Sequence record: LT603033.1
Length of the DNA stretch: 64,000 bases
Direction: 5' to 3' (one strand)
Shown here: one piece after another, positions 24,915 to 62,927 of the stretch
How the letters are laid out: every line of letters begins with the position of its first letter
How positions within the stretch are numbered: the stretch's first letter is position 1
Notes under the pieces: model-generated
What the model saw: only the letters and a program-made list of their open reading frames with translations
The model's database searches: none
Told to the model about the DNA's origin: nothing
Program-made: the position numbers and the translations under genes

Positions 24915-25003
24915 ACCGAAAATCGCACTTTTTAAAGCTTTTAAAAAAGGCGATTTTATTCAGTACTAAATAATATCATACTTTATACGAATGTAATATA
25001 TCT

Positions 25004-25864
25004 ATGGAGGATATAATGGCGAATTTAAAACTACTACAAGAAGCAATTGCGGCGTTTGCAAATGGCGAACAAGATATTGCTGATAAAAAAATGCGTAAGT
25101 ATTTCGTTGAGCAAGCTCAAGAAATTAACAAACAACTAGAAGAAAGCATGGAAGATGAAGACGACGATGAAGATTGTGAAGTCGAAGTTAAAGTCAAAGA
25201 TGAAGAAAAGCTTGACGAAGATTTTGATGTACAACCAGACGAAGGTCTAAATGCTGAAATCGAATACACCCTTGGTGAAGAAGATGAAAGTGCAGAAGAA
25301 GAAGTTGAATTCTCTGCTGATGCAGATGGTGACGGTGAAGACGATGTTGACGTTGAAGTGAAAGCTGATGCTGATGTTCCTTCCGAAGACCAATGGGAAT
25401 CAATCCAAGATGCTTTCCGTGGCCTACAACAAATGTTTGATGAAATCGGTGACGGTGAAGTTGATCTAGATTCTGAAGAAGAAGTAGAAGATAGCGAAGA
25501 AGAAGTTGGTGTTGACGGTGACGACGAATTTGCTGATGTTGAATTCGGCGATGAAAAATTCGGTGAATCCTTCAAACTAGAAAAAGTTGCTCCAGTTGAT
25601 AAGAAAGAAAAAGCTGGCACTCATTCCAAATCTCCAGTAGCACCAGAAGCTAAATCTCCAGTAGCAGGAGCAGAGCCAGTTAAATTCGCTAAGAAAACTG
25701 ACCAAGCCCCACTACTAGACCTAGATGATAAATCTGTTCTACCAAAAGATAGCCTAGATCTTGGTAAAAATGCTCGCGGTGAAATGAAAGATGTTAAAGC
25801 ACCAAAAACTACTGCATCTAATTCTAAATCACCACTAAGCAAAGCACAACCTAAACTAAAATAA
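25004..25864 (+). CDS. Highly acidic prohead core protein (gp67-like)
   Basis: Extremely D/E-rich 286 aa directly upstream of the protease; basic KSPVA-repeat C-terminus. Confidence 0.5.
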   Translation: MEDIMANLKLLQEAIAAFANGEQDIADKKMRKYFVEQAQEINKQLEESMEDEDDDEDCEVEVKVKDEEKLDEDFDVQPDEGLNAEIEYTLGEEDESAEEEVEFSADADGDGEDDVDVEVKADADVPSEDQWESIQDAFRGLQQMFDEIGDGEVDLDSEEEVEDSEEEVGVDGDDEFADVEFGDEKFGESFKLEKVAPVDKKEKAGTHSKSPVAPEAKSPVAGAEPVKFAKKTDQAPLLDLDDKSVLPKDSLDLGKNARGEMKDVKAPKTTASNSKSPLSKAQPKLK

Positions 25865-33386: not shown

Positions 33387-36300
33387 ATGTATATCGATGC
33401 TTATATGGAACGTAAACGTACTGGTGATATTCTTCATGTAGTTGAACGTAAGAATGGTAAACGTATTCTACGCGAATTAGAACCAGTATATGAATATTAT
33501 GTTGAATCCCCACAAGGAACACATAAAACTGTTTATGGTACAATGGCTAAACATTTTGAGTTTCAAACTCAAGCTCAAATGAATAAAAGTGTAGAGAAAC
33601 ACAAAAGTGAAGGTCTACGTATTTTTGAAAGTGATTGTAACATTACATTTAAAACATTAGCCAAAGAATATATGGGAAAAGGCTCACCCGATTTGAACAT
33701 CGTGTTCTTCGATATCGAGACTGATTTCCATAAGAAATTTGGTTATGCTCCACCATCAGACCCGTTTAACCGAGTAACCGCTATTTCTCTATATCAATCA
33801 TGGACTGGAAAGGATTATGTACTTACTTTACCACCTGCTGATATGGAAATTTATGAAGCACAAGATATTGTTCGCCAACTAAATGAAGAAACAAACGATC
33901 CTAACAGTACTGTAATTTTATATACAGACGAAAAGGAAATGTTTATGGAATTCTTTAGTTTAATTGATGATTCTGATGTTATTTCAGGATGGAATAGTGA
34001 ATTCTTTGATATTCCATATATGATCAATCGAACTAAAAAAATCTTCAATGAAGCAACAACTGCTCGTTGGTGTTTATGGAATAAAAAACCAAATTCACGT
34101 GAAGCAGACAACTTTGGTAAAACTGTTCAAACATATGATCTGGTAGGTCGCGTCCATCTTGATTATTTGGCTTTGTATAAGAAACATGCTGGTCAAGTTG
34201 AACAATCTTATAAACTAGATTATATTGCTGAAAAAGTAACTAAAGAAAATAAAGTATCCTATGAAGGTTCATTGGATAAACTTTACAGAGAGGATTACAT
34301 TACTTTCTTGCGTTATTCTAAACAGGATAGTATTCTTCTTAAAAAGATTGATGCTAAATGTGACTATATCAACCTACACAATCGACTTGCACACAAAGAA
34401 TGTGTACTTATCAGTACAACAATGGGTTCAGTAGCACTAATCGACACTGCTATTATCAACTTAGCACATACTCGTGGTGAAGTTGTTTTCAACAAAGCAC
34501 CGAAAGATGATCTTGAGTTTGATCCAGAAATGGAATATTATGGTGAAGATGGTGAAGATGAAGATGAGAAAATTAGTGCAAAAGCAGCAGGTGCATGGGT
34601 ACAAGATCCAGTACTAGGACTTGTAAGTGACCTTGGGTGTACTGACTTTAACTCTCTTTACCCTACTGTTCTACGTACTTTGGGTATGAGTACTGAATGT
34701 ATTCTTGGTCAATTACGTCAAGATTACACCGATGCGTATCTTGCAGCTAAAATCCAAGAACAGAAGAACAAATCTAAATCTAAATCATTTGAACCAGATT
34801 GGACTGCGGCATGGCATGGTTTATTTGCTGCTGTTGAATTTACAATGGTTCATGAAAAGTCAGAAGAAACATTGATTGTTGATTTAGAAGATGGGAGTTC
34901 TTTTAAAGCAACGGGCAAAGAGCTATATGATATTATTTTTGCAGAAGATAGTACTATTGTACTTAGTGCAAACGGAACACTTTTTGATAAGTCTAAGTCT
35001 GGTGTAATTCCTGACATTCTAACTCAATGGTATTCTGAACGTAAAGCACAGCAAAAAATGGTCATTGACTACAAACATATGTATACTGATGGTTGGGAGT
35101 TTAATGGCTATGAAAAAGTTGAACCACTACTATCAAACTATACCCCTGGTACAATGTTTAGAACTAATATTCATGATAATGATCCTGTATACTTACTTCG
35201 TAAAGAAATTGGTAAAGGACAGTGGGATGAAGTTGCTAAGTTGATTGTAGAAAACGGATTAGTACTAAAAGATGGTCGTATTTTCTGTCCTAAAGAAGAA
35301 AAAGATTACTTCAAACAACGTAGTGCTTTCTGGAAACAGAACCAACAGATTCGTAAGATTCTTCTAAACAGTCTATATGGTGCACTATTGAACAAAGGTT
35401 CTCGTTTTTTTGACAAACGTTTAGGTCAATCCGTAACATTAACTGGACGTTCTATGACCAAACATATGGCAAGTCGTATCAATGAAATTACTACTGGTGT
35501 ATATAACCACCAAGGTGGTTCAGTAATTTATGGTGATACTGACTCAGTTTACTTTAGTGTAACTCATTATCTGAAAGAACAAGGTATTCCATATAATCTA
35601 TCTAAAGAAGAGATTGTTGATATGTATATTAAAATTGGTGAAGAAGTTGGTGAATCTTTCCCATCATTTATGCATGAGATGTTCAACACTGGTATTGAAA
35701 AAGGTAAGATTGTTGGTGCAGACCTTGAGATGGTTGGTTCGCGTGGCCTATTCTTGAAGAAAAAACGTTATGCAATTCTGAAGTACTGGGAAGATGGGTT
35801 CCGTAAAGATATTGATGGTAAACCAGGTGAAATCAAAGCGATGGGTCTTGAAATTAAACGCTCAGACACGCCAAAATACATCCAGAACTTCCTAGAAGAG
35901 ACTCTAATCGCATTACTGGTAGGTGAGAGTGAACAACAGCTAAAACAGCGTGTACGTGAGTTTAAGGACGTATTTAAGGATATGCCTGTACATGAAAAAG
36001 GTTCACCAAAAACTGTAAAAAACTACACTAATTTAGAGGCTGAATATCAGCTAACTGGTAAGTGTAAAGTTGGTCACGTTCTTGCTGGTATCCAATGGAA
36101 CCGTCTACGTGAAGTTTATGATGATAAATCTGTACCAGAAGTAACGGATGGAACAAAAGTAATTGTCTGTAACTTAAAAGATAATCCTATGGGAATTAAA
36201 GCTGTTGGTTATCCAATTGACTGTGTTGAGTATCTTCCAGAATGGTTCTTGGAACTACCATTTGATACTGAAAAAATGGAAGAGATTGTTCTAACTAAAA

Positions 36301-36392
36301 AATTAGAGAATATTTTTGGTATTTTGGATATGGATATTGGTATTCATGAAAAAAGTACTGCGTCAGTAAACAATGGATTCTTCACTTGGTAA
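33387..36392 (+). CDS. gp43: Family B DNA polymerase
   Basis: Exo motifs FFDIETD, GWNSEFFDIPY, YSKQD; polymerase motifs DFNSLYP, KILLNSLYG, YGDTDS; 1001 aa, uninterrupted. Confidence 0.95.
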   Translation: MYIDAYMERKRTGDILHVVERKNGKRILRELEPVYEYYVESPQGTHKTVYGTMAKHFEFQTQAQMNKSVEKHKSEGLRIFESDCNITFKTLAKEYMGKGSPDLNIVFFDIETDFHKKFGYAPPSDPFNRVTAISLYQSWTGKDYVLTLPPADMEIYEAQDIVRQLNEETNDPNSTVILYTDEKEMFMEFFSLIDDSDVISGWNSEFFDIPYMINRTKKIFNEATTARWCLWNKKPNSREADNFGKTVQTYDLVGRVHLDYLALYKKHAGQVEQSYKLDYIAEKVTKENKVSYEGSLDKLYREDYITFLRYSKQDSILLKKIDAKCDYINLHNRLAHKECVLISTTMGSVALIDTAIINLAHTRGEVVFNKAPKDDLEFDPEMEYYGEDGEDEDEKISAKAAGAWVQDPVLGLVSDLGCTDFNSLYPTVLRTLGMSTECILGQLRQDYTDAYLAAKIQEQKNKSKSKSFEPDWTAAWHGLFAAVEFTMVHEKSEETLIVDLEDGSSFKATGKELYDIIFAEDSTIVLSANGTLFDKSKSGVIPDILTQWYSERKAQQKMVIDYKHMYTDGWEFNGYEKVEPLLSNYTPGTMFRTNIHDNDPVYLLRKEIGKGQWDEVAKLIVENGLVLKDGRIFCPKEEKDYFKQRSAFWKQNQQIRKILLNSLYGALLNKGSRFFDKRLGQSVTLTGRSMTKHMASRINEITTGVYNHQGGSVIYGDTDSVYFSVTHYLKEQGIPYNLSKEEIVDMYIKIGEEVGESFPSFMHEMFNTGIEKGKIVGADLEMVGSRGLFLKKKRYAILKYWEDGFRKDIDGKPGEIKAMGLEIKRSDTPKYIQNFLEETLIALLVGESEQQLKQRVREFKDVFKDMPVHEKGSPKTVKNYTNLEAEYQLTGKCKVGHVLAGIQWNRLREVYDDKSVPEVTDGTKVIVCNLKDNPMGIKAVGYPIDCVEYLPEWFLELPFDTEKMEEIVLTKKLENIFGILDMDIGIHEKSTASVNNGFFTW

Positions 36393-40477: not shown

Positions 40478-45735
<5,258 letters not shown>

Positions 45736-48611: not shown

Positions 48612-49430
48612 ATGACAAAATTAAATGAGTTTTTATCAAATGTAGCAGTTCTAGATACTGAAACTACTGGGGTTGAGAGTGAAGATGATATTATTGAATT
48701 TAGTATCTCGTATCCACATACTTCACATGAAAACATTGATACTATTGATAACTATACATTGAGATACAAACCCTTGAAAGATATTCCACCAGAGGCATCT
48801 GCTGTGCACTTTATCAGTACTGAGGATGTAGCTAATTGTGTTGGGTATAAAGATGATTTAGATAACATTGATGCACTTATGGGATGCCGTAAGTATTTTG
48901 TTGGTCATAATGTACAATTTGACCGTAGAATGATGGTAGATAACGAATATAAATATCGTAACTCAATTTCACAGTACTTACTTGATGAAAATAAATGGAT
49001 TTGTACCCTTCGTCTTGCTAAGAAAATGTTCGCAGAAGATATTGAATTTAAAAACTTAACTCTAAGTTATTTGTGGTATAAGTTTGGATGTTATCGTGAT
49101 GTTCATCGACCTGTTAATGCACACGCAGCAAAAGACGATGTGTTTATGTGTTATCAGGTTCTAATCAAATTAGTTGAAATTGCAATCGAACGTGGACATA
49201 TCGAACCTAATGGTGATATTGGTGAGCAAATTGTAACTTTCTGCAACACACCAATGCGTTATCAATTCATGCCATTTGGTAAACACAAAGGTGAGCCAAT
49301 GAGTACAGTTCCATTGAATTACATTGAATGGATGATTACTAATAGTGACATTTTAGATGCAAGTAACCCTAACTGTGATAAAGATTTAGTATATACATTT
49401 GAGTACGAATATAATACTCGAACTAATTAA
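48612..49430 (+). CDS. DEDDh 3'-5' exonuclease (DnaQ/exonuclease X-like)
   Basis: VLDTETTG, VGHNVQFD, AHAAKDD; C-terminal MPFGKHKG...YIEWM domain. Confidence 0.88.
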   Translation: MTKLNEFLSNVAVLDTETTGVESEDDIIEFSISYPHTSHENIDTIDNYTLRYKPLKDIPPEASAVHFISTEDVANCVGYKDDLDNIDALMGCRKYFVGHNVQFDRRMMVDNEYKYRNSISQYLLDENKWICTLRLAKKMFAEDIEFKNLTLSYLWYKFGCYRDVHRPVNAHAAKDDVFMCYQVLIKLVEIAIERGHIEPNGDIGEQIVTFCNTPMRYQFMPFGKHKGEPMSTVPLNYIEWMITNSDILDASNPNCDKDLVYTFEYEYNTRTN

Positions 49431-49445
49431 TAAAGGTAATCATGG

Positions 49446-50930
49446 ATGAAAACTTGTAAGTTAACCTTATTGGATGAGGTGAATTGTAAATTTGAGGGAC
49501 TTGATCCCTCAATTAGACAAAAGATGATTCGTGCAACTGAATATGTGTTACCATATGCAAAGTTCACACCAGCAGGACGTATTGGACGTTGGGATGGTAA
49601 AGTTCAGTTTATGAATTTAGGCGGAACAACTTATTATCATATGTTAGATAAGTTATTGCCTATTCTTGATGAAGCTAAGATTGACATTGAATTAGTAGAT
49701 CATAGGGTAGATTATGGATTTAAATTTGACCCCATTGATGAAGATATTTTTAGTGATGTTGTATTCGGTGCAGGACACCACATGGAAGGTAAATCCATAA
49801 AACTACGTGAACATCAAGTTAATGCGGTTAATGCATGTTTGGCTAATCCACACGGACTGCTATTGGCAGCTACTGGTGCAGGTAAAACTCTCATTACTGC
49901 TGCATTGTCAAAGAAAGTGCAAGAGTATGGACGTTCTGTTATAATAGTACCAAGTACTGACTTAGTACAACAAACATATGATGACTACATTATGTGTGGG
50001 TTGGATACTGGCATGTTCTATGGTTCACAAAAAGATTTTGGTCACCAACATACTATTACGACTTGGCAATCATTTAACTCTCTATGGAAGAAAACCAAGA
50101 AAGGTGAAATTGAATTAACTGAACAAGACGTGAATGATTTTATCGATGGAGTAGTTTGTGTTATCGTTGATGAGTGTCAAGGTGCAGGCGGTGACGCATT
50201 AGTTCAAGTACTTTCTAAAGTTATGAATAACGTACCATTACGTTGGGGTCTTACTGGAACAATTCCTAAAGATCCGGTAGTTGCCGCGAAAATCAAATGT
50301 AATGTTGGTGATGTTATATTTAAAATAACTGCAAAGGAATTACAAGATAAACAAATACTAAGTACATGTAATGTGAATTGCATCAAACTAAAAAGTAGTA
50401 TGAAGTTTGCATCATATGCTGAAGAGTTGAAATACTTAGTAACTGACAGAGATAGGATGGCATATGTAGCGTCATTGATATCTGCGTTATCTGAATCAGG
50501 AAACACTTTAGTTTTAGTAGATAGACTTGAAGCAGGTGAGTTGCTATGTGAATTTTTAGGCATTCCCAAATCAGAATTCGTTCGTGGAGAAACTAAAAAG
50601 AAAGATCGAGAATCATCTTATGGTGAAATTCGTTGGGCTGATAATAAAATACTTATTGCGACATACGGCGTTGCCAGTACTGGTATTAGTATTTCAAGGT
50701 TATATAATGTAGTATTGATTGAGCCAGGAAAAAGTTTTGTAAGAACTATACAGTCAATTGGACGTGGATTACGCCGAGCAGAAGATAAAGACCACGTAGA
50801 AATATATGATATTAGTGGTTCTAATAAGTATAGTGCTAAGCATTTACGAGAACGTTTAGCTTACTATAAGGAAGCACAATATCCTCATAGTATAATAGAT
50901 GTTAAAGATTGGGAAAACACAGCGGGATAA
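49446..50930 (+). CDS. uvsW: Superfamily 2 DNA/RNA helicase
   Basis: LREHQ; ATGAGKT; IVDEC; GLTGT; STGISI; QSIGRGLR. Confidence 0.92.
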   Translation: MKTCKLTLLDEVNCKFEGLDPSIRQKMIRATEYVLPYAKFTPAGRIGRWDGKVQFMNLGGTTYYHMLDKLLPILDEAKIDIELVDHRVDYGFKFDPIDEDIFSDVVFGAGHHMEGKSIKLREHQVNAVNACLANPHGLLLAATGAGKTLITAALSKKVQEYGRSVIIVPSTDLVQQTYDDYIMCGLDTGMFYGSQKDFGHQHTITTWQSFNSLWKKTKKGEIELTEQDVNDFIDGVVCVIVDECQGAGGDALVQVLSKVMNNVPLRWGLTGTIPKDPVVAAKIKCNVGDVIFKITAKELQDKQILSTCNVNCIKLKSSMKFASYAEELKYLVTDRDRMAYVASLISALSESGNTLVLVDRLEAGELLCEFLGIPKSEFVRGETKKKDRESSYGEIRWADNKILIATYGVASTGISISRLYNVVLIEPGKSFVRTIQSIGRGLRRAEDKDHVEIYDISGSNKYSAKHLRERLAYYKEAQYPHSIIDVKDWENTAG

Positions 50931-51925: not shown

Positions 51926-52771
51926 GTGTTTGATTTCAGTGATATTAAAAATAAGTCGGTCGATGATGATGAAAAACCAACACAGCATTCTTTTTCTATT
52001 GCTGAATTTCTAAAACACATTGACCGTGCTGATTATAAGTACTATAATGACATGACCGAAAAAGAACGAAAAGAGTTTACTCCATATACTGTTTTGCGAT
52101 GGGTAAGCTCTTTAGATGATTCGTTACAAGTAACCTACCCTAGTAGTAAAGTTGAAAGTGTATTTGGAAAATGGAAATCTGGTGGTAAAGAAGCACTGAC
52201 TGAACTAGTTACTGAATTAAAGTCTTCAGGGACAAATGTTTCATCAGTAACTAAGTACTGTCATAGTGATTATGATTGGCGTATTAAATTTGCAGTCCAA
52301 TCAAAAGATGACGCACAAAAATTAATATCCTCAATGGTCGAATTTGGCGTATCAGGTTCAGAAATTGTTTCATTAGTAGATACTGAAGTTGTCAAATACC
52401 AACTTATTATGCTAAATGATATGGTTAATGATGGATTTTGGGATATGAAAGAACATCCAGAATTAGTATATCAGCTTATGTGTTCAGTCCATGATATGAT
52501 TGGTGGACAAGAAATGCCACGTAACTGGTTAAACTTTTCTAAGAATTTCAAAAAGGCAAATAACGAATTATTTGAGTTAATTAAAAGCTCACAACCTGAT
52601 ACTATATCTACTCAAATGAATGAAGATGAGTACAAAATTGTTCTATTGCAGTATGATAAAAAAACATTTGAGACATTTCTTGACAATAATGGTTTTCAAG
52701 ATAATGAAAAGAAATCTATGATGAAATTGTTTAAAGAAGAATGTAAAAAATATGGCAAAGAAATCAAGTAA
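51926..52771 (+). CDS. Clamp-loader small subunit-like protein (gp62-like) with internal insertion
   Basis: GTG start with AGGAG; KEFTPYTVLRWVSS and LNDMVNDGFWDMKEHPELVYQLMC resemble gp62-family motifs separated by about 90 extra residues. Confidence 0.45.
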   Translation: MFDFSDIKNKSVDDDEKPTQHSFSIAEFLKHIDRADYKYYNDMTEKERKEFTPYTVLRWVSSLDDSLQVTYPSSKVESVFGKWKSGGKEALTELVTELKSSGTNVSSVTKYCHSDYDWRIKFAVQSKDDAQKLISSMVEFGVSGSEIVSLVDTEVVKYQLIMLNDMVNDGFWDMKEHPELVYQLMCSVHDMIGGQEMPRNWLNFSKNFKKANNELFELIKSSQPDTISTQMNEDEYKIVLLQYDKKTFETFLDNNGFQDNEKKSMMKLFKEECKKYGKEIK

Positions 52772-53462
52772 TAAAGTATATACCTGTAGATTTTGTGATC
52801 GTGAATTTAAACGTGAAGAAACTGTAAACACACATAAATGTATAAAACGTGACCGATACGAAGACCGCCAAAGCCGCCAGATGATGGAGGCTTTTCGTAT
52901 ATATATGCAATTTATGGAATTGAATAAGTTCCCATTTAAAAAAGGCGTAGAGCCTTTTATTGCTTTTATAAAGTCAAAGTACTTTAATGATTTTTATAGT
53001 TTTGCCGAATACTATTTGAATAATAGAGATATTATTAATGTGGACGAGTTTGTAAAGTACTTGATTATCAATAACAAACCAATCACGGAATGGAGTACAT
53101 ATAAAGCAAAAGATGAATGGATATTAAAAACAATTCGTGCCGAGCACCCAAAAGAAGCAATTGCAAGAAGTGTTATCTCACTGGTTGAATGGGCTGAAAA
53201 TTTGAATGTACAATGGAATACTTTCTTTGAAAATGTAAGTTCTGCCCGTGCAATTGCATGGATTGAGAGTGGTAAAATTTCACCTTGGATTATCTGGCTT
53301 GCTCCTAAAAAAAGTACTAATAAGTTTTTTAAAAAACTATCAAACTCAGAAATTGAATATATACTTAAATACATCGATCCAAGTTATTTTGAAATCAAAA
53401 CTATAAAATACAAAAAGGATTGTGATGAAATTAAGATTATGCTATGTGAGGCAGGATTATGA
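52752..53462 (+). CDS. Hypothetical protein with N-terminal zinc finger
   Basis: YTCRFCDREFKREETVNTHKC; C-terminal SGKISPW. Confidence 0.6.
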   Translation: MAKKSSNKVYTCRFCDREFKREETVNTHKCIKRDRYEDRQSRQMMEAFRIYMQFMELNKFPFKKGVEPFIAFIKSKYFNDFYSFAEYYLNNRDIINVDEFVKYLIINNKPITEWSTYKAKDEWILKTIRAEHPKEAIARSVISLVEWAENLNVQWNTFFENVSSARAIAWIESGKISPWIIWLAPKKSTNKFFKKLSNSEIEYILKYIDPSYFEIKTIKYKKDCDEIKIMLCEAGL

Positions 53463-53788
53463 ATGGAAAAAGTATATATAATAAAATACCAGAAGGGTAT
53501 GTACCTGTACCTAAAGAACAAAAATCAAAACAAATATCTCTACTTAGACAAGGATCTATTACTGAAATAACTTTAGATGGTAAAACATTTCAAGTTCATG
53601 ATCCTGCTCGTATTGAAAAAATTATTTCTTTGGTAGAAAGACACGAAGAACGCTTTTTCAGTTTAAGTCAAGAATTGGCAAAGACAAAACAAAATTGTAG
53701 ATTATTAGAGAATCAAATATCAACTTTGACTAATACAGTTAAACAGTTACAGGAGCAAATAAAAAATGCAGGATTCGACCGATTCTAA
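53459..53788 (+). CDS. Coiled-coil hypothetical protein
   Basis: 109 aa; heptad-like C-terminal half; coupled to neighbours. Confidence 0.55.
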   Translation: MNGKSIYNKIPEGYVPVPKEQKSKQISLLRQGSITEITLDGKTFQVHDPARIEKIISLVERHEERFFSLSQELAKTKQNCRLLENQISTLTNTVKQLQEQIKNAGFDRF

Positions 53789-54404
53789 ACATTATAGAAA
53801 AGCCCGAACTGATATTGACATTGACTTCAAGGATAGTAAAAGCGTAATCGCTAAACTTCCATGTGTGCGAAGTACTGAAAAAATTACGGAGGATGGTTTA
53901 ATCCCCCATAATAGTGGTGTTCATTTTGATAATATACCTATTGATCCAATCACTGGATTGGCAAGTATACAATATAAAGAAGCTGAAAGGTTAGGGTATC
54001 AAAAAGTTGATATTCTTTCACAGTCAGCTTACATGTATGTTCGTGATAGAGAGCATTTAAAAGAACTAATGAATCAGGAACCAAATTGGGATCTATTGTT
54101 AGAACCCGAAATTGTAGAACATCTATCGCAAATTAAAAAACATGTAACTTTATTAAATGTATGGAAGCCTAAATCTATAGACGAACTAGCAATGTTTATT
54201 GCAATGATTCGCCCAGGAAAAAGGCAGTGCCAAAGTATGAACACATGGGACGAAGTTAAAGCTACCATATGGGATTATAGTACTATAGGCACTGACCAAG
54301 CAGGAAATAAATTACGATATTTCAAAAAGCCACATGCTTACGCATATAGCTTAATGATTGTTGTACAACTAAATGCTTTAGTTGAACATCTTACTTCTTC
54401 TTAA
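53766..54404 (+). CDS. Minimal DNA polymerase III alpha (DnaE, family C)-like protein
   Basis: TDIDIDF, PHNSG, GYQKVDIL, PKSIDELAMFIAMIRPG and FKKPHAYAY match DnaE palm/finger motifs; only 212 aa. Confidence 0.8.
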   Translation: MQDSTDSKHYRKARTDIDIDFKDSKSVIAKLPCVRSTEKITEDGLIPHNSGVHFDNIPIDPITGLASIQYKEAERLGYQKVDILSQSAYMYVRDREHLKELMNQEPNWDLLLEPEIVEHLSQIKKHVTLLNVWKPKSIDELAMFIAMIRPGKRQCQSMNTWDEVKATIWDYSTIGTDQAGNKLRYFKKPHAYAYSLMIVVQLNALVEHLTSS

Positions 54405-54744
54405 GAGCCACATTACGACGCTTGATGCGTTTCTGTGGCAAATTGCTTAAAGAAACTACTGGACCACATACGAAATTCACCGACGGTGTATCGAATCTCT
54501 GTGTGTACGGTTCAAATTTCTCCATCTCTTCTTGAAAGAATAGACAAACTGGAATGGTTCTATTACTTTGCCACCACCAATCGTGTGCTATACCTAACAA
54601 TTCGTCTTGCATTGAATCATCCATATCATCGAAACAGTAAAGAGTTGTATACTGTTTGCTTTTGATTTTGATGATACCAACAAACGTTTTACCATCATAC
54701 TGGATTACAGTAATGAATGGTGGAATAGTGTTATATTGATTCAT
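54391..54744 (-). CDS. Hypothetical protein
   Basis: 117 aa with WWWQSNRTIPVCLFF...GPVVSL...KRIKRR; has its own late-promoter motif. Confidence 0.6.
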   Translation of the reverse strand: MNQYNTIPPFITVIQYDGKTFVGIIKIKSKQYTTLYCFDDMDDSMQDELLGIAHDWWWQSNRTIPVCLFFQEEMEKFEPYTQRFDTPSVNFVCGPVVSLSNLPQKRIKRRNVALKKK

Positions 54745-55834: not shown

Positions 55835-56890
55835 ATGAACGCTGTACAAAACATAATGGCACAAATTATGAATGATCCAGTACCTGCGATTGGTACATGG
55901 TCACAACACAACTGTCCAGCTTGTGTGTTCAGAGGACATTCAAGGCCGGATACAAAGCACCGTGGTAATCATATGTTCAATGCAGATGGTTCCGTTTCAT
56001 ATAACTGCTTTAACTGTAGTTTAAAAACTGGTTGGCAACCAGGAAAATATATGAGCAAAGATATGGAGTCTTTGCTCATTTCTTTTGGTGCACAAGATAA
56101 AGAAATAGAATTAGTTAAGTTTTATATTAAAGAAATGGTTGACAGCGGTGATTTTGCTGCACAAGAAACTGTTGCATCAAAATTGTATGACCGAGTAACA
56201 GTACGTGATTTGCCATCAAATGCAAAAACATTTTGGGAATGGGCTTCTTTACCTGAAGATAAAATTCCACAAGAATTTATAAGTGTTTTGCATAATGTCA
56301 ATGAAAGAAACCCATATCTGTTAGACTTAGAATTATATTGGTCACCTAATAAAGAACATAAAATGTATGACAGATTTATTATTCCATATTTCATGAATGG
56401 TAAAATTATTGGTTATACTGCACGACATAAATTAAAAGATCCTGGAAGTACATACAGGTTCATAAATCAAGTAAGTACTAATATACTATATAACTATGAT
56501 TTATTAAAAGATGAACGAATAAAAACAATTTTAGTATGTGAGGGTCCGTTAGACGCAGCATTAATGGGTGGTGTATCTGCTAATAACTTTAAATTATCAA
56601 ACGTACAGATTGATGTATTAAAAGATGCACAGCAAAAAGGTAAAAAAATAGTTATTGTTCCAGATAGAGATAAAGATGGATTAATAACTATAGACCAAGC
56701 ACTTGAAAATGGATTCAGTGTTTCCTTCCCAGACTTTGGTGCTGTAAGAGAAGGTAGTACAATACGTCATATCAAAGACTTTGAAGAAGCTTGTGCACGA
56801 TTTGGTAGGTTATTTTGTTTACAATTAATACATGATAGTATAGTAGATGAGCCATTTTATATTAAAGCTCAAACGGATAAATGGATGTAA
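55835..56890 (+). CDS. gp61: DNA primase (gp61/DnaG-type)
   Basis: Zn finger CPAC...CFNC; TOPRIM VCEGPLDA and VPDRDKDG. Confidence 0.82.
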   Translation: MNAVQNIMAQIMNDPVPAIGTWSQHNCPACVFRGHSRPDTKHRGNHMFNADGSVSYNCFNCSLKTGWQPGKYMSKDMESLLISFGAQDKEIELVKFYIKEMVDSGDFAAQETVASKLYDRVTVRDLPSNAKTFWEWASLPEDKIPQEFISVLHNVNERNPYLLDLELYWSPNKEHKMYDRFIIPYFMNGKIIGYTARHKLKDPGSTYRFINQVSTNILYNYDLLKDERIKTILVCEGPLDAALMGGVSANNFKLSNVQIDVLKDAQQKGKKIVIVPDRDKDGLITIDQALENGFSVSFPDFGAVREGSTIRHIKDFEEACARFGRLFCLQLIHDSIVDEPFYIKAQTDKWM

Positions 56891-56912
56891 TACATATAAT
56901 GAGGGAACATAG

Positions 56913-58433
56913 ATGATTCAAAGCACAGTGGATGTGAAACAATATGGGATTAATGCACAACAATACTTATTATCTCAGATTTTCAGTAATCCTGATTTAT
57001 ATGTACGTTGTAAAAATATCCTTAAACCAGAATATTTTGATAAAACATTTCATGAAAGTATTCAATACGTGCATGATTATGCTGCAAAATATAGTTCATC
57101 ACCTACTTTGAAAGATATTGAAGTTAAAGGTGGTTATCAATACGATCAATATGAAGTTCAAGAATTACATAAACAATCAGTACTTGATACCTGTGGTGAA
57201 TTTTGTCGCCATAAAGCATTAGCTTTAGCCGTTGAAAAAGGAATGGAACTTGTCCATCAGAAAAAATATGGTGGAATCGAAGAACTAATCCGAGAAGCAA
57301 TGTTGGTAACGGTACAGAATGAGTTAGGTTTGGATATTTTTGAAAACCCTGAAGATACAATCCGCTCACTCAGTACAATGCAAGGATCATTTAAGAGTGG
57401 TTGGGAAACTCTTGATTACAAACTTTTCGGTGGATTTGGGCGTAGAGAGTTAGAGATCTTTGCTGCTGCATCAGGTGGTGGTAAATCAGTAGTACTGCAA
57501 AATTTAGCAGTTAACTTTGCGAAAGCTGGAATGAATGGTGCATACATTTCACTTGAACTAGCTGAAGAGTTGGTTGCTGTTCGTATCTATGGTATGATGA
57601 CTGAATCAAAACTCAGTAACGTAAAAAATGAAGCTGAAAAGATTGGATTTGCTGTTAAAGTTGAAGGTAAAAACAGTGGTATGTTGCGTATTAAACGCTT
57701 ACCTGAATCTGTAACAACCACAGACGATATTGAAAGTTATCTACGTGAATTACAAATTAAGATGGAAATCAAACTTGATTATGTATGCGTGGACTATTTG
57801 GATCTATTAACTTCTAATCGTCTTGGACCAAATGATAAATCCAATACATTTACTAAAGATAAATTTGTATCAGAAGAATTACGTGCTCTTGCATCCAAAA
57901 TGGATTTGACTGTTTTCACTGCATCTCAGTTTAACCGTAGTGGTATGGACGAAGATAAGAAAAGTCAAAGTCAGATTGCTGGTGGTATTTCAAAAATTTA
58001 TACTGCTGATAACGTAATTTATATTGAAGCAAAAAAAGAAACTGGCGAACTATGGTTTGATTTCCAAAAAACACGTAACAGTAGTGCAGTAGGTTCCCGT
58101 TTGCGTATGTCATATGATATTGATTCATTGAGAGTTCTTGACCACGCAACTACAGTACAACAAATGGAAACCGAAGGTAATGGATTCCGTCACAGCGGTG
58201 TTTCTAAGATTGGTGGAGGGAACATGGCGTTACCACCCAGCACTATGCAAACATTACGTCATTCGCTTTCTGGTGCAGCTAAATCACCATCTGTGCAACC
58301 TGACAATACAGTAACACTAAATACTGATAGTGCTCCTAACTCTACGACACAAAACGAAATACAGAATCCACAGACACATGCTGGTACTGATCGTGTTCAT
58401 GCAATGAAGCAATGGTTAAATCAAAGGAAATGA
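56913..58433 (+). CDS. gp41: Replicative helicase (gp41/DnaB-type)
   Basis: ASGGGKS Walker A; YISLEL; CVDYLDL; SEELRALA; TASQFNRSG; QKTRNS; low-complexity C-terminal tail. Confidence 0.92.
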   Translation: MIQSTVDVKQYGINAQQYLLSQIFSNPDLYVRCKNILKPEYFDKTFHESIQYVHDYAAKYSSSPTLKDIEVKGGYQYDQYEVQELHKQSVLDTCGEFCRHKALALAVEKGMELVHQKKYGGIEELIREAMLVTVQNELGLDIFENPEDTIRSLSTMQGSFKSGWETLDYKLFGGFGRRELEIFAAASGGGKSVVLQNLAVNFAKAGMNGAYISLELAEELVAVRIYGMMTESKLSNVKNEAEKIGFAVKVEGKNSGMLRIKRLPESVTTTDDIESYLRELQIKMEIKLDYVCVDYLDLLTSNRLGPNDKSNTFTKDKFVSEELRALASKMDLTVFTASQFNRSGMDEDKKSQSQIAGGISKIYTADNVIYIEAKKETGELWFDFQKTRNSSAVGSRLRMSYDIDSLRVLDHATTVQQMETEGNGFRHSGVSKIGGGNMALPPSTMQTLRHSLSGAAKSPSVQPDNTVTLNTDSAPNSTTQNEIQNPQTHAGTDRVHAMKQWLNQRK

Positions 58434-62207: not shown

Positions 62208-62927
62208 ATGTACACACCACCAATTGTTAGCAGATATACATATGTTGGTTACAATAGAATTGAAGGCGGCCCAGAAGGTCGCCTTTATTCAACTCCAACA
62301 GGTAATCTGCCGTCAGTAACAACAATTCTAAGTGCGACCTCGAATGACGAAGGTTTAAAGAAATGGAGAGAATTTGTTGGTGAAGAAAAGGCTAATGAGA
62401 TTACATTAGAAGCATGTACAGTTGGTACTTTTATGCATGAGAACTTGGAATTTAGATTGGAAGGAAAGCCAGACCATGAAGGCGGTATGCCAATTCGAGT
62501 TCTTGCACGTAGAATGGCTGACAAAATTCAGCAAGAAGCATGGCCTAGAATTAATGAAGTATGGGGACAGGAAGTCCCATTGTACTATGAAGGTTTATGG
62601 GCCGGAACAACTGATTTAGTAGGTGTTCATGATGGAATCCCAACCATTATGGATTATAAAAATTCCCGTAAAGTTAAGAAGTGGGGACAAATCGAAAATT
62701 ATCGTATGCAAATTGCAGCATATGCATTAGCCCATAATCAAATGTTTGGTACTAATATAGAACGTGGTGTGATTTTCATCTGTGTAAGAAAAGATCCTAA
62801 CAATCTACAATATCAAGAGTTTGTCATAGAAGGTCAAGACTTCAAAGATGCAGTCAATATGTGGATTGAACGTGTAGAACAATACTATATTTTACGTGGA
62901 GAAATTGAATCAAATGGAGCAGCATAA
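62208..62927 (+). CDS. PD-(D/E)XK exonuclease (Cas4/YqaJ-like phage exonuclease)
   Basis: LPSVTTIL; GTFMHENLE; QEVPL; AGTTDLVG; IMDYKNS; YRMQIAAYA. Confidence 0.85.
   Translation: MYTPPIVSRYTYVGYNRIEGGPEGRLYSTPTGNLPSVTTILSATSNDEGLKKWREFVGEEKANEITLEACTVGTFMHENLEFRLEGKPDHEGGMPIRVLARRMADKIQQEAWPRINEVWGQEVPLYYEGLWAGTTDLVGVHDGIPTIMDYKNSRKVKKWGQIENYRMQIAAYALAHNQMFGTNIERGVIFICVRKDPNNLQYQEFVIEGQDFKDAVNMWIERVEQYYILRGEIESNGAA

What the first reader, a model, noticed from the sequence alone, without database searches (positions are those of the whole stretch)
53766..54404. 212-aa minimal family-C polymerase alongside a complete family-B replicase
Seen: TDIDIDF and KVDIL correspond to E. coli DnaE PDFDVDF (D401/D403) and KFDFL (D555), so all three catalytic aspartates appear intact; RPG and FKKPHAYAY finger motifs are retained. 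PHP, most of the thumb/fingers, clamp-binding and OB domains are absent (about one fifth of DnaE length). It ends an operon with the clamp-loader-like gene, close to primase/helicase. Similar short DnaE-like ORFs are, from memory, annotated in other jumbo phages, but I know of no demonstrated function. Inference: a specialised nucleotidyltransferase such as a primer extender, primase partner or repair/modification enzyme.
Basis: partly seen in the sequence, partly recalled or inferred. Interest (0 to 1): 0.7.

Follow-up and report, generated by a model that had tools for sequence, protein, structure and literature searches.

The report
Half of a split mini-Pol III
This 212-residue jumbo-phage gene encodes only the metal- and template-binding half of a tiny two-piece relative of the bacterial replicative polymerase DnaE; the nucleotide-binding half lies about 31 kb away outside the window, the pair was described computationally in 2021, and its function is still untested.

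Summary
The ORF at 53766-54404 (+) is real, is under strong purifying selection (dN/dS 0.037) and belongs to a family of several hundred standalone proteins of about 190-220 aa. Sequence, profile and fold evidence all show it derives from the palm and fingers core of C-family polymerases.

It is not a self-contained polymerase. It starts exactly at the DxD strand and lacks the preceding helix, strand and GRGS nucleotide-binding loop. A separate 172-aa protein supplies these (Pfam PF07733, 37.9 bits). Its gene is about 31 kb downstream on the same strand, outside the window. The two genes co-occur in 96 and 94 phage records, and rare natural fusions join them in one chain. A fusion folds confidently (pLDDT 90, pTM 0.87), and its only significant structural matches are DnaE and PolC.

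Iyer et al. 2021 (Viruses 13:63) already described this split minimal Pol III alpha in "group 2.2" jumbo phages. I found no biochemical study. An accessory primer-extension or gap-filling role is inference only.

The parts
53766..54404 (+). C-unit: C-terminal (Mg2+- and template-binding) half of the split minimal Pol III alpha, 212 aa
   Evidence: ORF; phrog_11778 'DNA polymerase' E=2e-108; AF2 pLDDT 92.5; Foldseek top 8 hits all Pol III alpha, prob 0.90-1.00; dN/dS 0.037
53751..53755 (+). AGGAG Shine-Dalgarno-like sequence 10 nt upstream of the ATG, inside the preceding ORF
   Evidence: Read directly from the sequence
53811..53825 (+). Codons for D16-I-D18-I-D20: metal-binding DxD strand (D16/D18 = DnaE D401/D403)
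   Evidence: Invariant in A1; 253/256 and 255/257 conserved; alignment to E. coli DnaE through the fusion and hhalign; catalytic role of D401/D403/D555 from PMC8485763
53907..53918 (+). Codons for H48-N-S-G51 (= DnaE H511...G514, 'KHAGG' palm motif)
   Evidence: hhalign; H48 254/255 and G51 253/256 conserved
54003..54011 (+). Codons for K80-V-D82 (= DnaE K553-F-D555; third catalytic aspartate)
   Evidence: hhalign hit 1; 261/263 conserved for each
54210..54218 (+). Codons for R149-P150-G151 (= DnaE FRPGP finger motif)
   Evidence: HMMER and hhalign alignments; R149 243/250 and P150 246/249 conserved
54321..54347 (+). Codons for F186-K-K-P-H190-A-Y-A-Y194 (= DnaE F756-N-K-S-H760...; H190 = steric-gate histidine)
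   Evidence: hhalign hit 2; H190 240/252 conserved; H760 as steric gate from PMC8485763
51926..53788 (+). Three overlapping same-strand upstream ORFs (281 aa; 236 aa with an N-terminal C2H2-like zinc finger; 109 aa coiled-coil) that form one gene string with the C-unit
   Evidence: Overlaps of 20, 4 and 23 nt; the 281-aa and 236-aa ORFs are conserved in the same position in Paride and Atu_ph07; function unknown
54391..54744 (-). Convergent 117-aa ORF overlapping the last 14 nt of the C-unit gene
   Evidence: phrog_11637; homologous ORF in the same convergent position in Paride and Atu_ph07 (E=2e-22 and 3e-22)
33387..36392 (+). Complete family-B DNA polymerase (T4 gp43-like), the phage's main replicase
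   Evidence: phrog_262 E=1e-219; PF03104 and PF00136 above their cut-offs
55835..58433 (+). DnaG-type primase (55835-56890) and DnaB-like helicase (56913-58433) downstream of the C-unit
   Evidence: phrog_47 E=4e-31; depositors' annotations; same arrangement in Paride and Atu_ph07
48612..49430 (+). Standalone DnaQ/epsilon-like DEDD 3'-5' exonuclease in the same replication cluster (context; no link to the mini-Pol III shown)
   Evidence: PF00929 E=7e-15; NCBIfam epsilon models E=4e-23, below their cut-offs

Best explanation
ORF 53766-54404 encodes the C-terminal subunit of a two-gene, split, minimal C-family (DnaE-like) nucleotidyltransferase. SHOWN: it carries the DxD strand, the third catalytic aspartate, the KHAGG-type histidine and a shortened fingers core that includes the steric-gate histidine. 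It begins exactly where DnaE's DxD strand begins. A 172-aa partner (N-unit) is encoded ~31 kb downstream on the same strand, outside the window at what would be about 84.7-85.3 kb. The partner matches DnaE 262-393, ends just before the DxD motif, and carries the invariant G-x-G-R-G-S-S-V-x-S nucleotide-binding loop. The two genes co-occur throughout this phage clade, and rare homologs have them fused into one chain. INFERRED: the two proteins associate non-covalently. The N-unit's strand and GS loop pack against the C-unit's DxD strand to complete a Pol-beta-type palm, giving a ~44 kDa enzyme that adds dNTPs to a primer on a template; the conserved steric-gate His argues for dNTP rather than rNTP. 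With no thumb, PHP, clamp-binding or OB domains, it should be distributive on its own. MORE SPECULATIVE (~0.3): it is an accessory polymerase of the T4-like replisome for short-patch synthesis, either extending primase-made primers before hand-off to the family-B polymerase or filling gaps in recombination and repair.
For: Homology and fold: Foldseek of the C-unit model gives only Pol III alpha hits, prob 0.9-1.0. The fusion model (pLDDT 90.4, pTM 0.87) gives 16 hits, all DnaE or PolC, E down to 2.5e-8, and the next hit has prob 0.02. The BFVD top 21 are all phage Pol III alpha. N-unit: PF07733 at 37.9 bits against a gathering score of 23.9; hhalign 91% probability, E=9e-7, to DnaE 262-393; invariant GRGSS motif and a fixed C-terminus. 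Rosetta stone: in fusions P0184 and P0257, PF07733 and the E. coli DnaE alignment run across the junction. Co-occurrence: 96 versus 94 phage records with matching genus counts, same strand, 14-224 kb apart. Active-site conservation. Purifying selection, dN/dS 0.037. No further DnaE pieces in the genome. Prior description: Iyer et al. 2021. Context for primer extension: the DnaG primase and DnaB module lies downstream in three distant lineages, and one fused homolog is translationally coupled to a ColE2-type AEP initiator primase gene.
Against: There is no biochemical or genetic evidence for any activity, for heterodimer formation or for a role in replication, and I found no such paper. I could not model the heterodimer itself; the single-chain fusion model is a proxy. 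The DnaE 'LRRAMGKK' finger segment (~645-750) is missing, so triphosphate binding may differ from DnaE. From memory, this segment carries arginines that contact the incoming triphosphate. The neighbourhood with primase and clamp loader is part of a core-genome synteny shared by the whole clade, so it is weak evidence for a specific partnership. The AEP-primase link rests on one 8-kb metagenomic contig. The family-B polymerase is complete, so no need for a second polymerase is evident.
Confidence: 0.7

Rival explanations
1. One reading: the 212-aa protein is a self-sufficient minimal polymerase or nucleotidyltransferase that works without the N-unit.
For: All three aspartates, K80, H48 and the steric-gate His lie in this one chain, and it folds confidently alone (pLDDT 92.5).
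Against: It lacks the G[GS] loop and the preceding helix and strand that, from established knowledge, define the Pol-beta nucleotidyltransferase fold (Aravind and Koonin 1999). Exactly that piece is a separate, strictly co-occurring protein whose C-terminus abuts the C-unit's N-terminus in the natural fusions.
Confidence: 0.05
2. The N+C complex is catalytically active but is not a templated DNA polymerase. It could be a terminal transferase, a DNA-end or nucleotide-modifying enzyme, or a maker of small nucleotide products used in conflict with the host, as other Pol-beta-fold enzymes are.
For: Loss of the thumb and about half of the fingers removes much of DnaE's duplex-binding surface. A complete family-B replicase is already present.
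Against: The retained finger helix with the steric-gate His and the FQL/RPG motifs are features of templated dNTP selection. Both genes sit in the core replication modules of all lineages examined.
Confidence: 0.15
3. It is a non-catalytic structural or regulatory replisome component (a pseudo-enzyme) derived from DnaE.
For: No activity has been shown, and major DNA-binding domains are absent.
Against: The metal ligands, K80, H48, H190 and the partner's GRGSS loop are nearly invariant across sequences down to ~30-40% identity. That is not expected once catalysis is lost.
Confidence: 0.05
4. It is a pseudogene fragment, or one piece of a full-length DnaE broken into many genes.
For: It is short (18% of DnaE) and falls below Pfam thresholds on its own.
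Against: dN/dS is 0.037. 785 word-index homologs and 509 representative clusters have consistent lengths. A full-length DnaE HMM against all 1404 ORFs of the genome finds only the N-unit, with no PHP, thumb, beta-binding or OB pieces (limited sensitivity).
Confidence: 0.01
5. The two halves are joined covalently by a split intein, as in cyanobacterial DnaE.
For: Split-intein dnaE genes exist (mentioned in PMC3919608).
Against: There is no room and no signal. The N-unit ends ...EFLK[W/Y] right after the DnaE-homologous helix, and the C-unit has only ~15 residues before the DxD. Natural fusions bridge the gap with ~10-15 ordinary residues. Pfam finds no intein or Hint domain in either protein.
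Confidence: 0.01

Closest known systems
Split minimal DNA polymerase III alpha of 'group 2.2' jumbo phages (Iyer, Anantharaman, Krishnan, Burroughs and Aravind 2021, Viruses 13:63; PMC7824862)
   Same: This is that system: an N-terminal NTP-binding unit and a C-terminal Mg2+/template-binding unit, encoded by distant genes, accompanied by a family-B polymerase, with no other Pol III domains.
   Different: Nothing essential. Added here: the partner located for this phage; natural single-chain fusions; confident AF2 models and fold searches; residue-level mapping including the steric-gate His; quantified conservation and selection; and the conserved C-then-N gene order and microsynteny.
Bacterial DnaE / PolC (C-family replicative polymerases; PDB 2hnh, 2hpi, 4iqj, 5lew, 3f2b)
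   Same: Pol-beta-type palm with D401/D403/D555 equivalents, the GRGS loop, the KHAGG, FQL and RPG motifs, and the FNKSH motif with the steric-gate His. They are the only significant structural matches.
   Different: About 384 aa in two chains against 1160 aa in one. No PHP, thumb, ~645-750 finger segment, distal fingers, beta-clamp motif, OB or tau-binding domains. Not the main replicase of its genome.
Bacillus subtilis DnaE as primer extender for PolC (PMC5627055, PMC5737612; abstracts seen)
   Same: A possible functional analogy only: a second, C-family polymerase that briefly extends primase-made primers before hand-off to the main replicase. Here the gene sits 1.4 kb from the primase.
   Different: B. 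subtilis DnaE is full length and its role is experimentally shown. No activity is known here, and the main replicase is family B.
Naturally split-intein DnaE of cyanobacteria
   Same: A C-family polymerase encoded by two distant genes.
   Different: There the halves are religated by protein trans-splicing into a full-length DnaE. Here there are no intein halves, the split point differs (immediately before the DxD strand), and the enzyme is minimal.
Family X polymerases (Pol beta-like gap-filling enzymes)
   Same: The same nucleotidyltransferase fold class and a similar total size (~40 kDa), which suggests distributive short-patch synthesis (established knowledge plus inference).
   Different: Different lineage within the fold. 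Every sequence and structure match here is to family C, none to family X.

Membership tests
C-family DNA polymerase catalytic core (DnaE/PolC) | Palm with DxD plus a third catalytic aspartate (E. coli D401, D403, D555) | tested here: met
   D16/D18 and D82 align to D401/D403 and D555 and are 99% conserved.
C-family DNA polymerase catalytic core (DnaE/PolC) | G[GS] nucleotide-binding loop (GRGS) upstream of the DxD strand, in the same polypeptide | tested here: not met
   Absent from the 212-aa ORF, which starts ~15 residues before the DxD. Present and invariant in the separate 172-aa N-unit, so the feature is met only in trans.
C-family DNA polymerase catalytic core (DnaE/PolC) | Finger motifs, including FNKSH with the steric-gate His760 | tested here: met
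   RPG and FKKPH align to FRPGP and FNKSH; H190 is 240/252 conserved; the role of H760 is from PMC8485763.
C-family DNA polymerase catalytic core (DnaE/PolC) | Curated family-model hit above threshold (Pfam PF07733 / PF17657) | tested here: not met
   C-unit alone: only PF17657, at 13.5 bits against a cut-off of 22. N-unit: PF07733 at 37.9 against 23.9. Fusion P0184: 59.6 bits across the junction.
C-family DNA polymerase catalytic core (DnaE/PolC) | Three-dimensional fold matches solved DnaE/PolC structures | tested here: met
   C-unit model: top 8 PDB hits all Pol III alpha, prob 0.90-1.00. Fusion model: 16 hits, all DnaE or PolC, E<=8e-4.
C-family DNA polymerase catalytic core (DnaE/PolC) | PHP, thumb, beta-clamp-binding, OB and C-terminal domains of the full-length replicase | tested here: not met
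   No aligned counterpart to DnaE 1-261, ~418-500, ~645-750 or >780. No such piece elsewhere in the genome at HMMER sensitivity.
C-family DNA polymerase catalytic core (DnaE/PolC) | Template-directed DNA polymerase activity | not testable with these tools
   Needs biochemistry; no published assay found.
Split minimal Pol III alpha of group 2.2 jumbo phages (Iyer et al. 2021) | Two standalone proteins: an N-terminal NTP-binding unit and a C-terminal Mg2+/template-binding unit | tested here: met
   C-unit in the window. N-unit at OR844650.1 62347-62865 (-), and 100% identical in IA-38, G17 and PBECO4.
Split minimal Pol III alpha of group 2.2 jumbo phages (Iyer et al. 2021) | The two units are encoded by distantly located genes | tested here: met
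   30,973 bp between starts in IA-38 (34287 vs 65260); 14-224 kb in other phages.
Split minimal Pol III alpha of group 2.2 jumbo phages (Iyer et al. 2021) | Accompanied by a T4-like family-B polymerase and replisome | tested here: met
   PolB at 33387-36392, plus gp32-like SSB, UvsX/UvsY-like genes, primase, DnaB, and the clamp loader next to the N-unit.
Split-intein DnaE | Intein N- and C-halves at the break point | tested here: not met
   No Hint or intein Pfam hit in either unit; no extra sequence at the junction compared with the natural fusions.

The most novel reading that the evidence does not exclude
The N+C pair is a true second replisomal DNA polymerase. It would be the smallest C-family polymerase known, and an obligate heterodimer whose palm sheet is assembled from two chains. 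In this reading it extends primase-made primers (DnaG here, an AEP initiator primase in a fused relative) for a few nucleotides before hand-off to the family-B polymerase, a phage counterpart of the B. subtilis DnaE-to-PolC or eukaryotic Pol alpha-to-Pol delta relay.
Probability: 0.25. Interest if true: 0.7.

Novelty: already known. Interest (0 to 1): 0.35.

Why it matters
If the two-piece enzyme is active, it marks the lower size limit of a C-family polymerase. It would also give a simple system for asking which parts of DnaE are needed for catalysis, sugar selection and fidelity. It bears on the suggestion by Iyer et al. that such minimal forms resemble the ancestor of the bacterial replicase. 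For annotation, the two short genes should be labelled as subunits of one split enzyme, rather than as 'DNA polymerase', 'membrane protein' or 'hypothetical protein', all of which appear in current records. As a scan finding it is not new.

Tried and rejected
- A single-sequence PDB search with the C-unit found nothing relevant, and Pfam on the C-unit alone stayed below threshold.
- A C-unit profile against the PDB gave only E~1 hits to DnaE1, suggestive but not significant. The case was settled by structure prediction, the partner protein and the fusions.
- A regex search for the GS loop inside the window found nothing; the partner is outside the window.
- Reading the Turkey3 annotation table was uninformative, so I switched to an unannotated, 99.8% identical record and searched locally.
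I replaced it with cluster representative P0270.
- The promoter and terminator scan was at chance level (44 vs 41.4 and 4 vs 2.8), so it says nothing on operon boundaries.
- 'Clamp-loader small subunit' for ORF 51926-52771 has no support in Pfam, PHROGs or NCBIfam.
- The proteobacterial DnaE HMM does not detect the C-unit itself, so its negative result for further DnaE pieces has limited sensitivity.
- A weak hit of window ORF 24974-25861 to the DnaE C-terminus (E=0.1 among 1404 ORFs) was treated as chance.
- Literature searches for biochemical or genetic follow-up found none. The PA5oct omics paper says only that replication genes are middle/late.
Full report
**What is there.** The window comes from an Asteriusvirus-type jumbo coliphage. 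The 3.1 kb around the finding is 100% identical to phages slurp01, G17, IA-38, CRJP21 and Sharanji, and 99.8% identical to PBECO4. ORF 53766-54404 (+) encodes 212 aa from an ATG that has AGGAG 10 nt upstream. It is the last of four overlapping same-strand ORFs (51926-54404). A convergent 117-aa ORF overlaps its last 14 nt. The surrounding region is a T4-like replication and recombination cluster:
- family-B polymerase at 33387-36392 (phrog_262 E=1e-219; PF03104 and PF00136 above their cut-offs)
- gp32-like SSB, and RecA/UvsX- and UvsY-like genes
- a DnaQ-like exonuclease at 48612-49430
- a UvsW-like helicase at 49446-50930
- DnaG-type primase at 55835-56890 and DnaB at 56913-58433

**Checking the observation.** The protein matches phrog_11778 ('DNA polymerase') end to end (E=2e-108). 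In Pfam it reaches only a sub-threshold PF17657 'DNA_pol3_finger' hit (13.5 bits against 22). It has 785 homologs in the word-indexed search and 509 representative clusters in the exhaustive search, almost all 90-230 aa.

In a 34-sequence alignment going down to 40% identity, the invariant positions include D16, D18, D20, H48, G51, K80, D82, R149, P150, K152, K187, H190 and Y194. Across 269 homologs the conservation is:

| Residue | Conserved / non-gap |
|---|---|
| D16 | 253/256 |
| D18 | 255/257 |
| D82 | 261/263 |
| K80 | 261/263 |
| H48 | 254/255 |
| H190 | 240/252 |

. Against the Turkey3 ortholog dN/dS is 0.037. The gene is therefore functional and its putative active site is under constraint.

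**Is it DnaE-derived?** Yes.
- An AlphaFold2 model of the ORF is confident (pLDDT 92.5, pTM 0.79). Its eight best PDB matches are all Pol III alpha (Thermus aquaticus and E. coli) at probability 0.90-1.00, and the ninth drops to 0.03.
- I fetched 80 bacterial dnaE loci and built an alignment of 59 full-length proteins. Its reference row, Pectobacterium DnaE, has E. coli numbering (D401, D403, K553-F-D555, F756-N-K-S-H760).
- hhalign of the phage family against this alignment gives three collinear local alignments. They are individually weak (E 0.42, 1.2e-3 and 2.8e-3):
  - D16/D18/D20 on D401/D403/D405
  - H48/G51 on H511/G514
  - K80/D82 on K553/D555
  - the FQ(I/L) and RPG motifs on FQLES and FRPGP
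  - F186-K-K-P-H190 on F756-N-K-S-H760

The parts of DnaE with no counterpart are 1-261 (PHP), about 418-500 (thumb), about 645-750, and everything after about 780.

Iyer et al. [quoted passage not shown] The window ORF starts about 15 residues before the DxD strand and has no G[GS] loop, so it should be the C-terminal unit. No partner is in the window. I fetched the rest of a 99.8% identical genome (OR844650.1) and found a 172-aa ORF at 62347-62865 (-). It ends ...WGLGRGSSVASYCLFLIGLHMVDSLKYELDVNEFLKW. The evidence for this N-unit:
- It is a significant PF07733 hit (37.9 bits against a gathering score of 23.9), and it matches phrog_11127 ('DNA polymerase') and ten NCBIfam DnaE models.
- hhalign places residues 50-171 on DnaE 262-393 with 91% probability (E=9e-7), ending immediately before DnaE's '...PERVSMPDFDVDF'.
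- Its family (176 homologs) has an invariant G-x-G-R-G-S-S-V-x-S motif, and nearly every aligned member stops within a few residues after ...EF(L/I)K.
- In IA-38, which is 100% identical to the window over the tested region, the C-unit starts at 34287 and the N-unit at 65260, on the same strand. That puts the N-unit at about 84.7-85.3 kb on the window's scale, roughly 20.7 kb past its end.

**Evidence that the two belong together.**
1. Co-occurrence. tblastn finds the C-unit in 96 phage records and the N-unit in 94, with matching genus counts (Escherichia 34/34, Pseudomonas 11/11, Salmonella 8/8, Erwinia 8/8, Klebsiella 11/10 and so on). In every record where both positions were listed, the two genes are on the same strand and 14-224 kb apart.
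2. Rosetta stone. The exhaustive search returned two longer proteins, P0184 (375 aa) and P0257 (336 aa). In these an N-unit-like sequence runs directly into a C-unit (...GVGRGSSSASLLLFLLKIHLIDPIKYKLNIKEFIKDNKEGIYNIADFDIDTKNRE...). In P0184 the PF07733 match (59.6 bits) and a phmmer alignment to E. coli DnaE 319-417 (E=3.5e-6) both cross the junction.
3. Fold. P0184, modelled with N-units and C-units as partial alignment rows, gives pLDDT 90.4 and pTM 0.87. Its 16 significant PDB matches are all DnaE or PolC (E 2.5e-8 to 8e-4), and the next hit has probability 0.02. In the viral structure library the top 21 are all phage Pol III alpha proteins.
4. No other pieces, and no intein. A full-length DnaE HMM run over all 1404 ORFs (60 aa or longer) of the genome finds only the N-unit. 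Neither unit has an intein or Hint domain or spare sequence at the break.

The whole is therefore a two-chain enzyme of about 384 aa. It is not a fragmented full-length DnaE, and it is not a trans-spliced one.

**Context.** Both genes sit in conserved replication modules.
- In Asteriusvirus, in the Pseudomonas PA5oct-like phage Paride and in Agrobacterium phage Atu_ph07 (C-units ~41-42% identical), the order is: UvsW-like helicase (not within the Atu_ph07 stretch fetched), homologs of the 165-, 281- and 236-aa ORFs, the C-unit, the convergent small ORF, a structural protein, primase and helicase.
- The N-unit is followed by a 114-aa ORF, a GroES-like gene and the AAA+ clamp-loader subunit.

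Because this is core-genome synteny for the whole clade, it is only weak evidence for specific partnerships. One independent hint exists. The fused homolog P0257 overlaps the stop codon of a PF03090 gene (50.7 bits) on an 8-kb metagenomic contig. The bona fide clamp-loader ATPase lies next to the N-unit, not the C-unit.

**How it most likely works.**
- Shown: the catalytic residues are distributed over two proteins, they co-occur, they are fused in rare relatives, and they form a DnaE-like fold.
- Inferred: the N-unit's short strand and GRGS loop pack against the C-unit's DxD strand to complete a Pol-beta-type palm. The C-unit supplies the metal ligands and the finger helix with the steric-gate histidine. 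The complex adds dNTPs to a primer on a template.
- Without thumb, distal fingers, clamp-binding and OB domains it should be distributive, comparable in size to gap-filling family-X polymerases.
- I put about 0.95 on the identity as one half of the split enzyme, about 0.8 on a catalytically active complex, about 0.6 on templated DNA synthesis, and about 0.3 on a primer-extension or gap-filling accessory role beside the family-B replicase. [quoted passage not shown] **Novelty and verdict.** The system was described computationally in 2021, and several GenBank records already label both genes as Pol III alpha. I found no biochemical or genetic study. The PA5oct omics paper states only that replication genes are middle/late. 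The finding is therefore already known. The small additions here are the located partner, the natural fusions, the models and the residue map including the steric gate. They make the obvious experiment straightforward: co-express both halves and assay primer extension.

Noticed in passing
window 54391-54744 (-): A 117-aa ORF converges on the C-unit gene and overlaps its last 14 nt. A homologous ORF sits in the same convergent, overlapping position in Pseudomonas phage Paride and Agrobacterium phage Atu_ph07 (E=2e-22 and 3e-22). Function unknown (phrog_11637).
   Followed up: partly
window 52752-53462 (+): A 236-aa protein with an N-terminal C2H2-like zinc finger (CRFCDREFKREETVNTHKC) lies one ORF upstream of the C-unit. 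It is conserved in the same position in Paride and Atu_ph07 (E=1e-37 and 4e-29). No family annotation.
   Followed up: partly
window 53459-53788 (+): A 109-aa coiled-coil ORF is labelled 'virion structural protein' (phrog_14909; 121Q gp15 'structural protein'). It sits inside the replication gene string and overlaps the C-unit start by 23 nt. It is not conserved in Paride or Atu_ph07.
   Followed up: partly
window 48612-49430 (+): A standalone DnaQ/epsilon-like DEDD exonuclease (PF00929 E=7e-15) is present even though the family-B polymerase has its own exonuclease domain. It could be a proofreading partner for the mini-Pol III, but no link was tested.
   Followed up: no
L092 1516-4181 (JGI metagenome contig Ga0669126_0033275): The fused mini-Pol III homolog P0257 is translationally coupled (4-nt overlap) to a 552-aa PF03090 (ColE2-type AEP initiator primase) plus HTH protein on an 8-kb contig. 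This primase-polymerase gene pair lies outside jumbo phages.
   Followed up: partly
L005 16301-18865 (OR844650.1 60301-62865): The N-unit lies about 1 kb upstream of the AAA+ clamp-loader subunit (phrog_168 E=1e-78), with a GroES-like gene between them. The same order occurs in Paride and Atu_ph07.
   Followed up: yes
window 51926-52771 (+): The Turkey3 record calls this 281-aa protein 'sliding-clamp-loader small subunit'. Pfam, PHROGs and NCBIfam give no support, so the label is unverified.
   Followed up: partly
BFVD hits (A0A1J0MHX4, A0A1J0MHX0): Pseudomonas phage PA5 has two separate 'DNA polymerase III alpha' proteins of 466 and 569 aa, and other phages have 525-650-aa versions. Differently split or shortened DnaE genes therefore seem to exist in other phage lineages.
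   Followed up: no
P0265 (233 aa): The first ~110 residues are a C-unit N-half. The rest resembles an RluA-type pseudouridine synthase motif region (recognised by eye, not tested). It is probably a chimeric or frameshifted metagenomic gene call.
   Followed up: no
(P0002, P0270, P0302, P0305): Both halves also appear as 'hypothetical protein [Escherichia coli]' or '[Salmonella enterica]' on contigs of 126-360 kb. That fits lytic jumbo-phage genomes present in bacterial isolate assemblies.
   Followed up: no
window 42711-44351 (+): A large terminase subunit gene (phrog_36964) and virion protein genes are interspersed with the replication genes, between the polymerase and the SSB/UvsX block.
   Followed up: no
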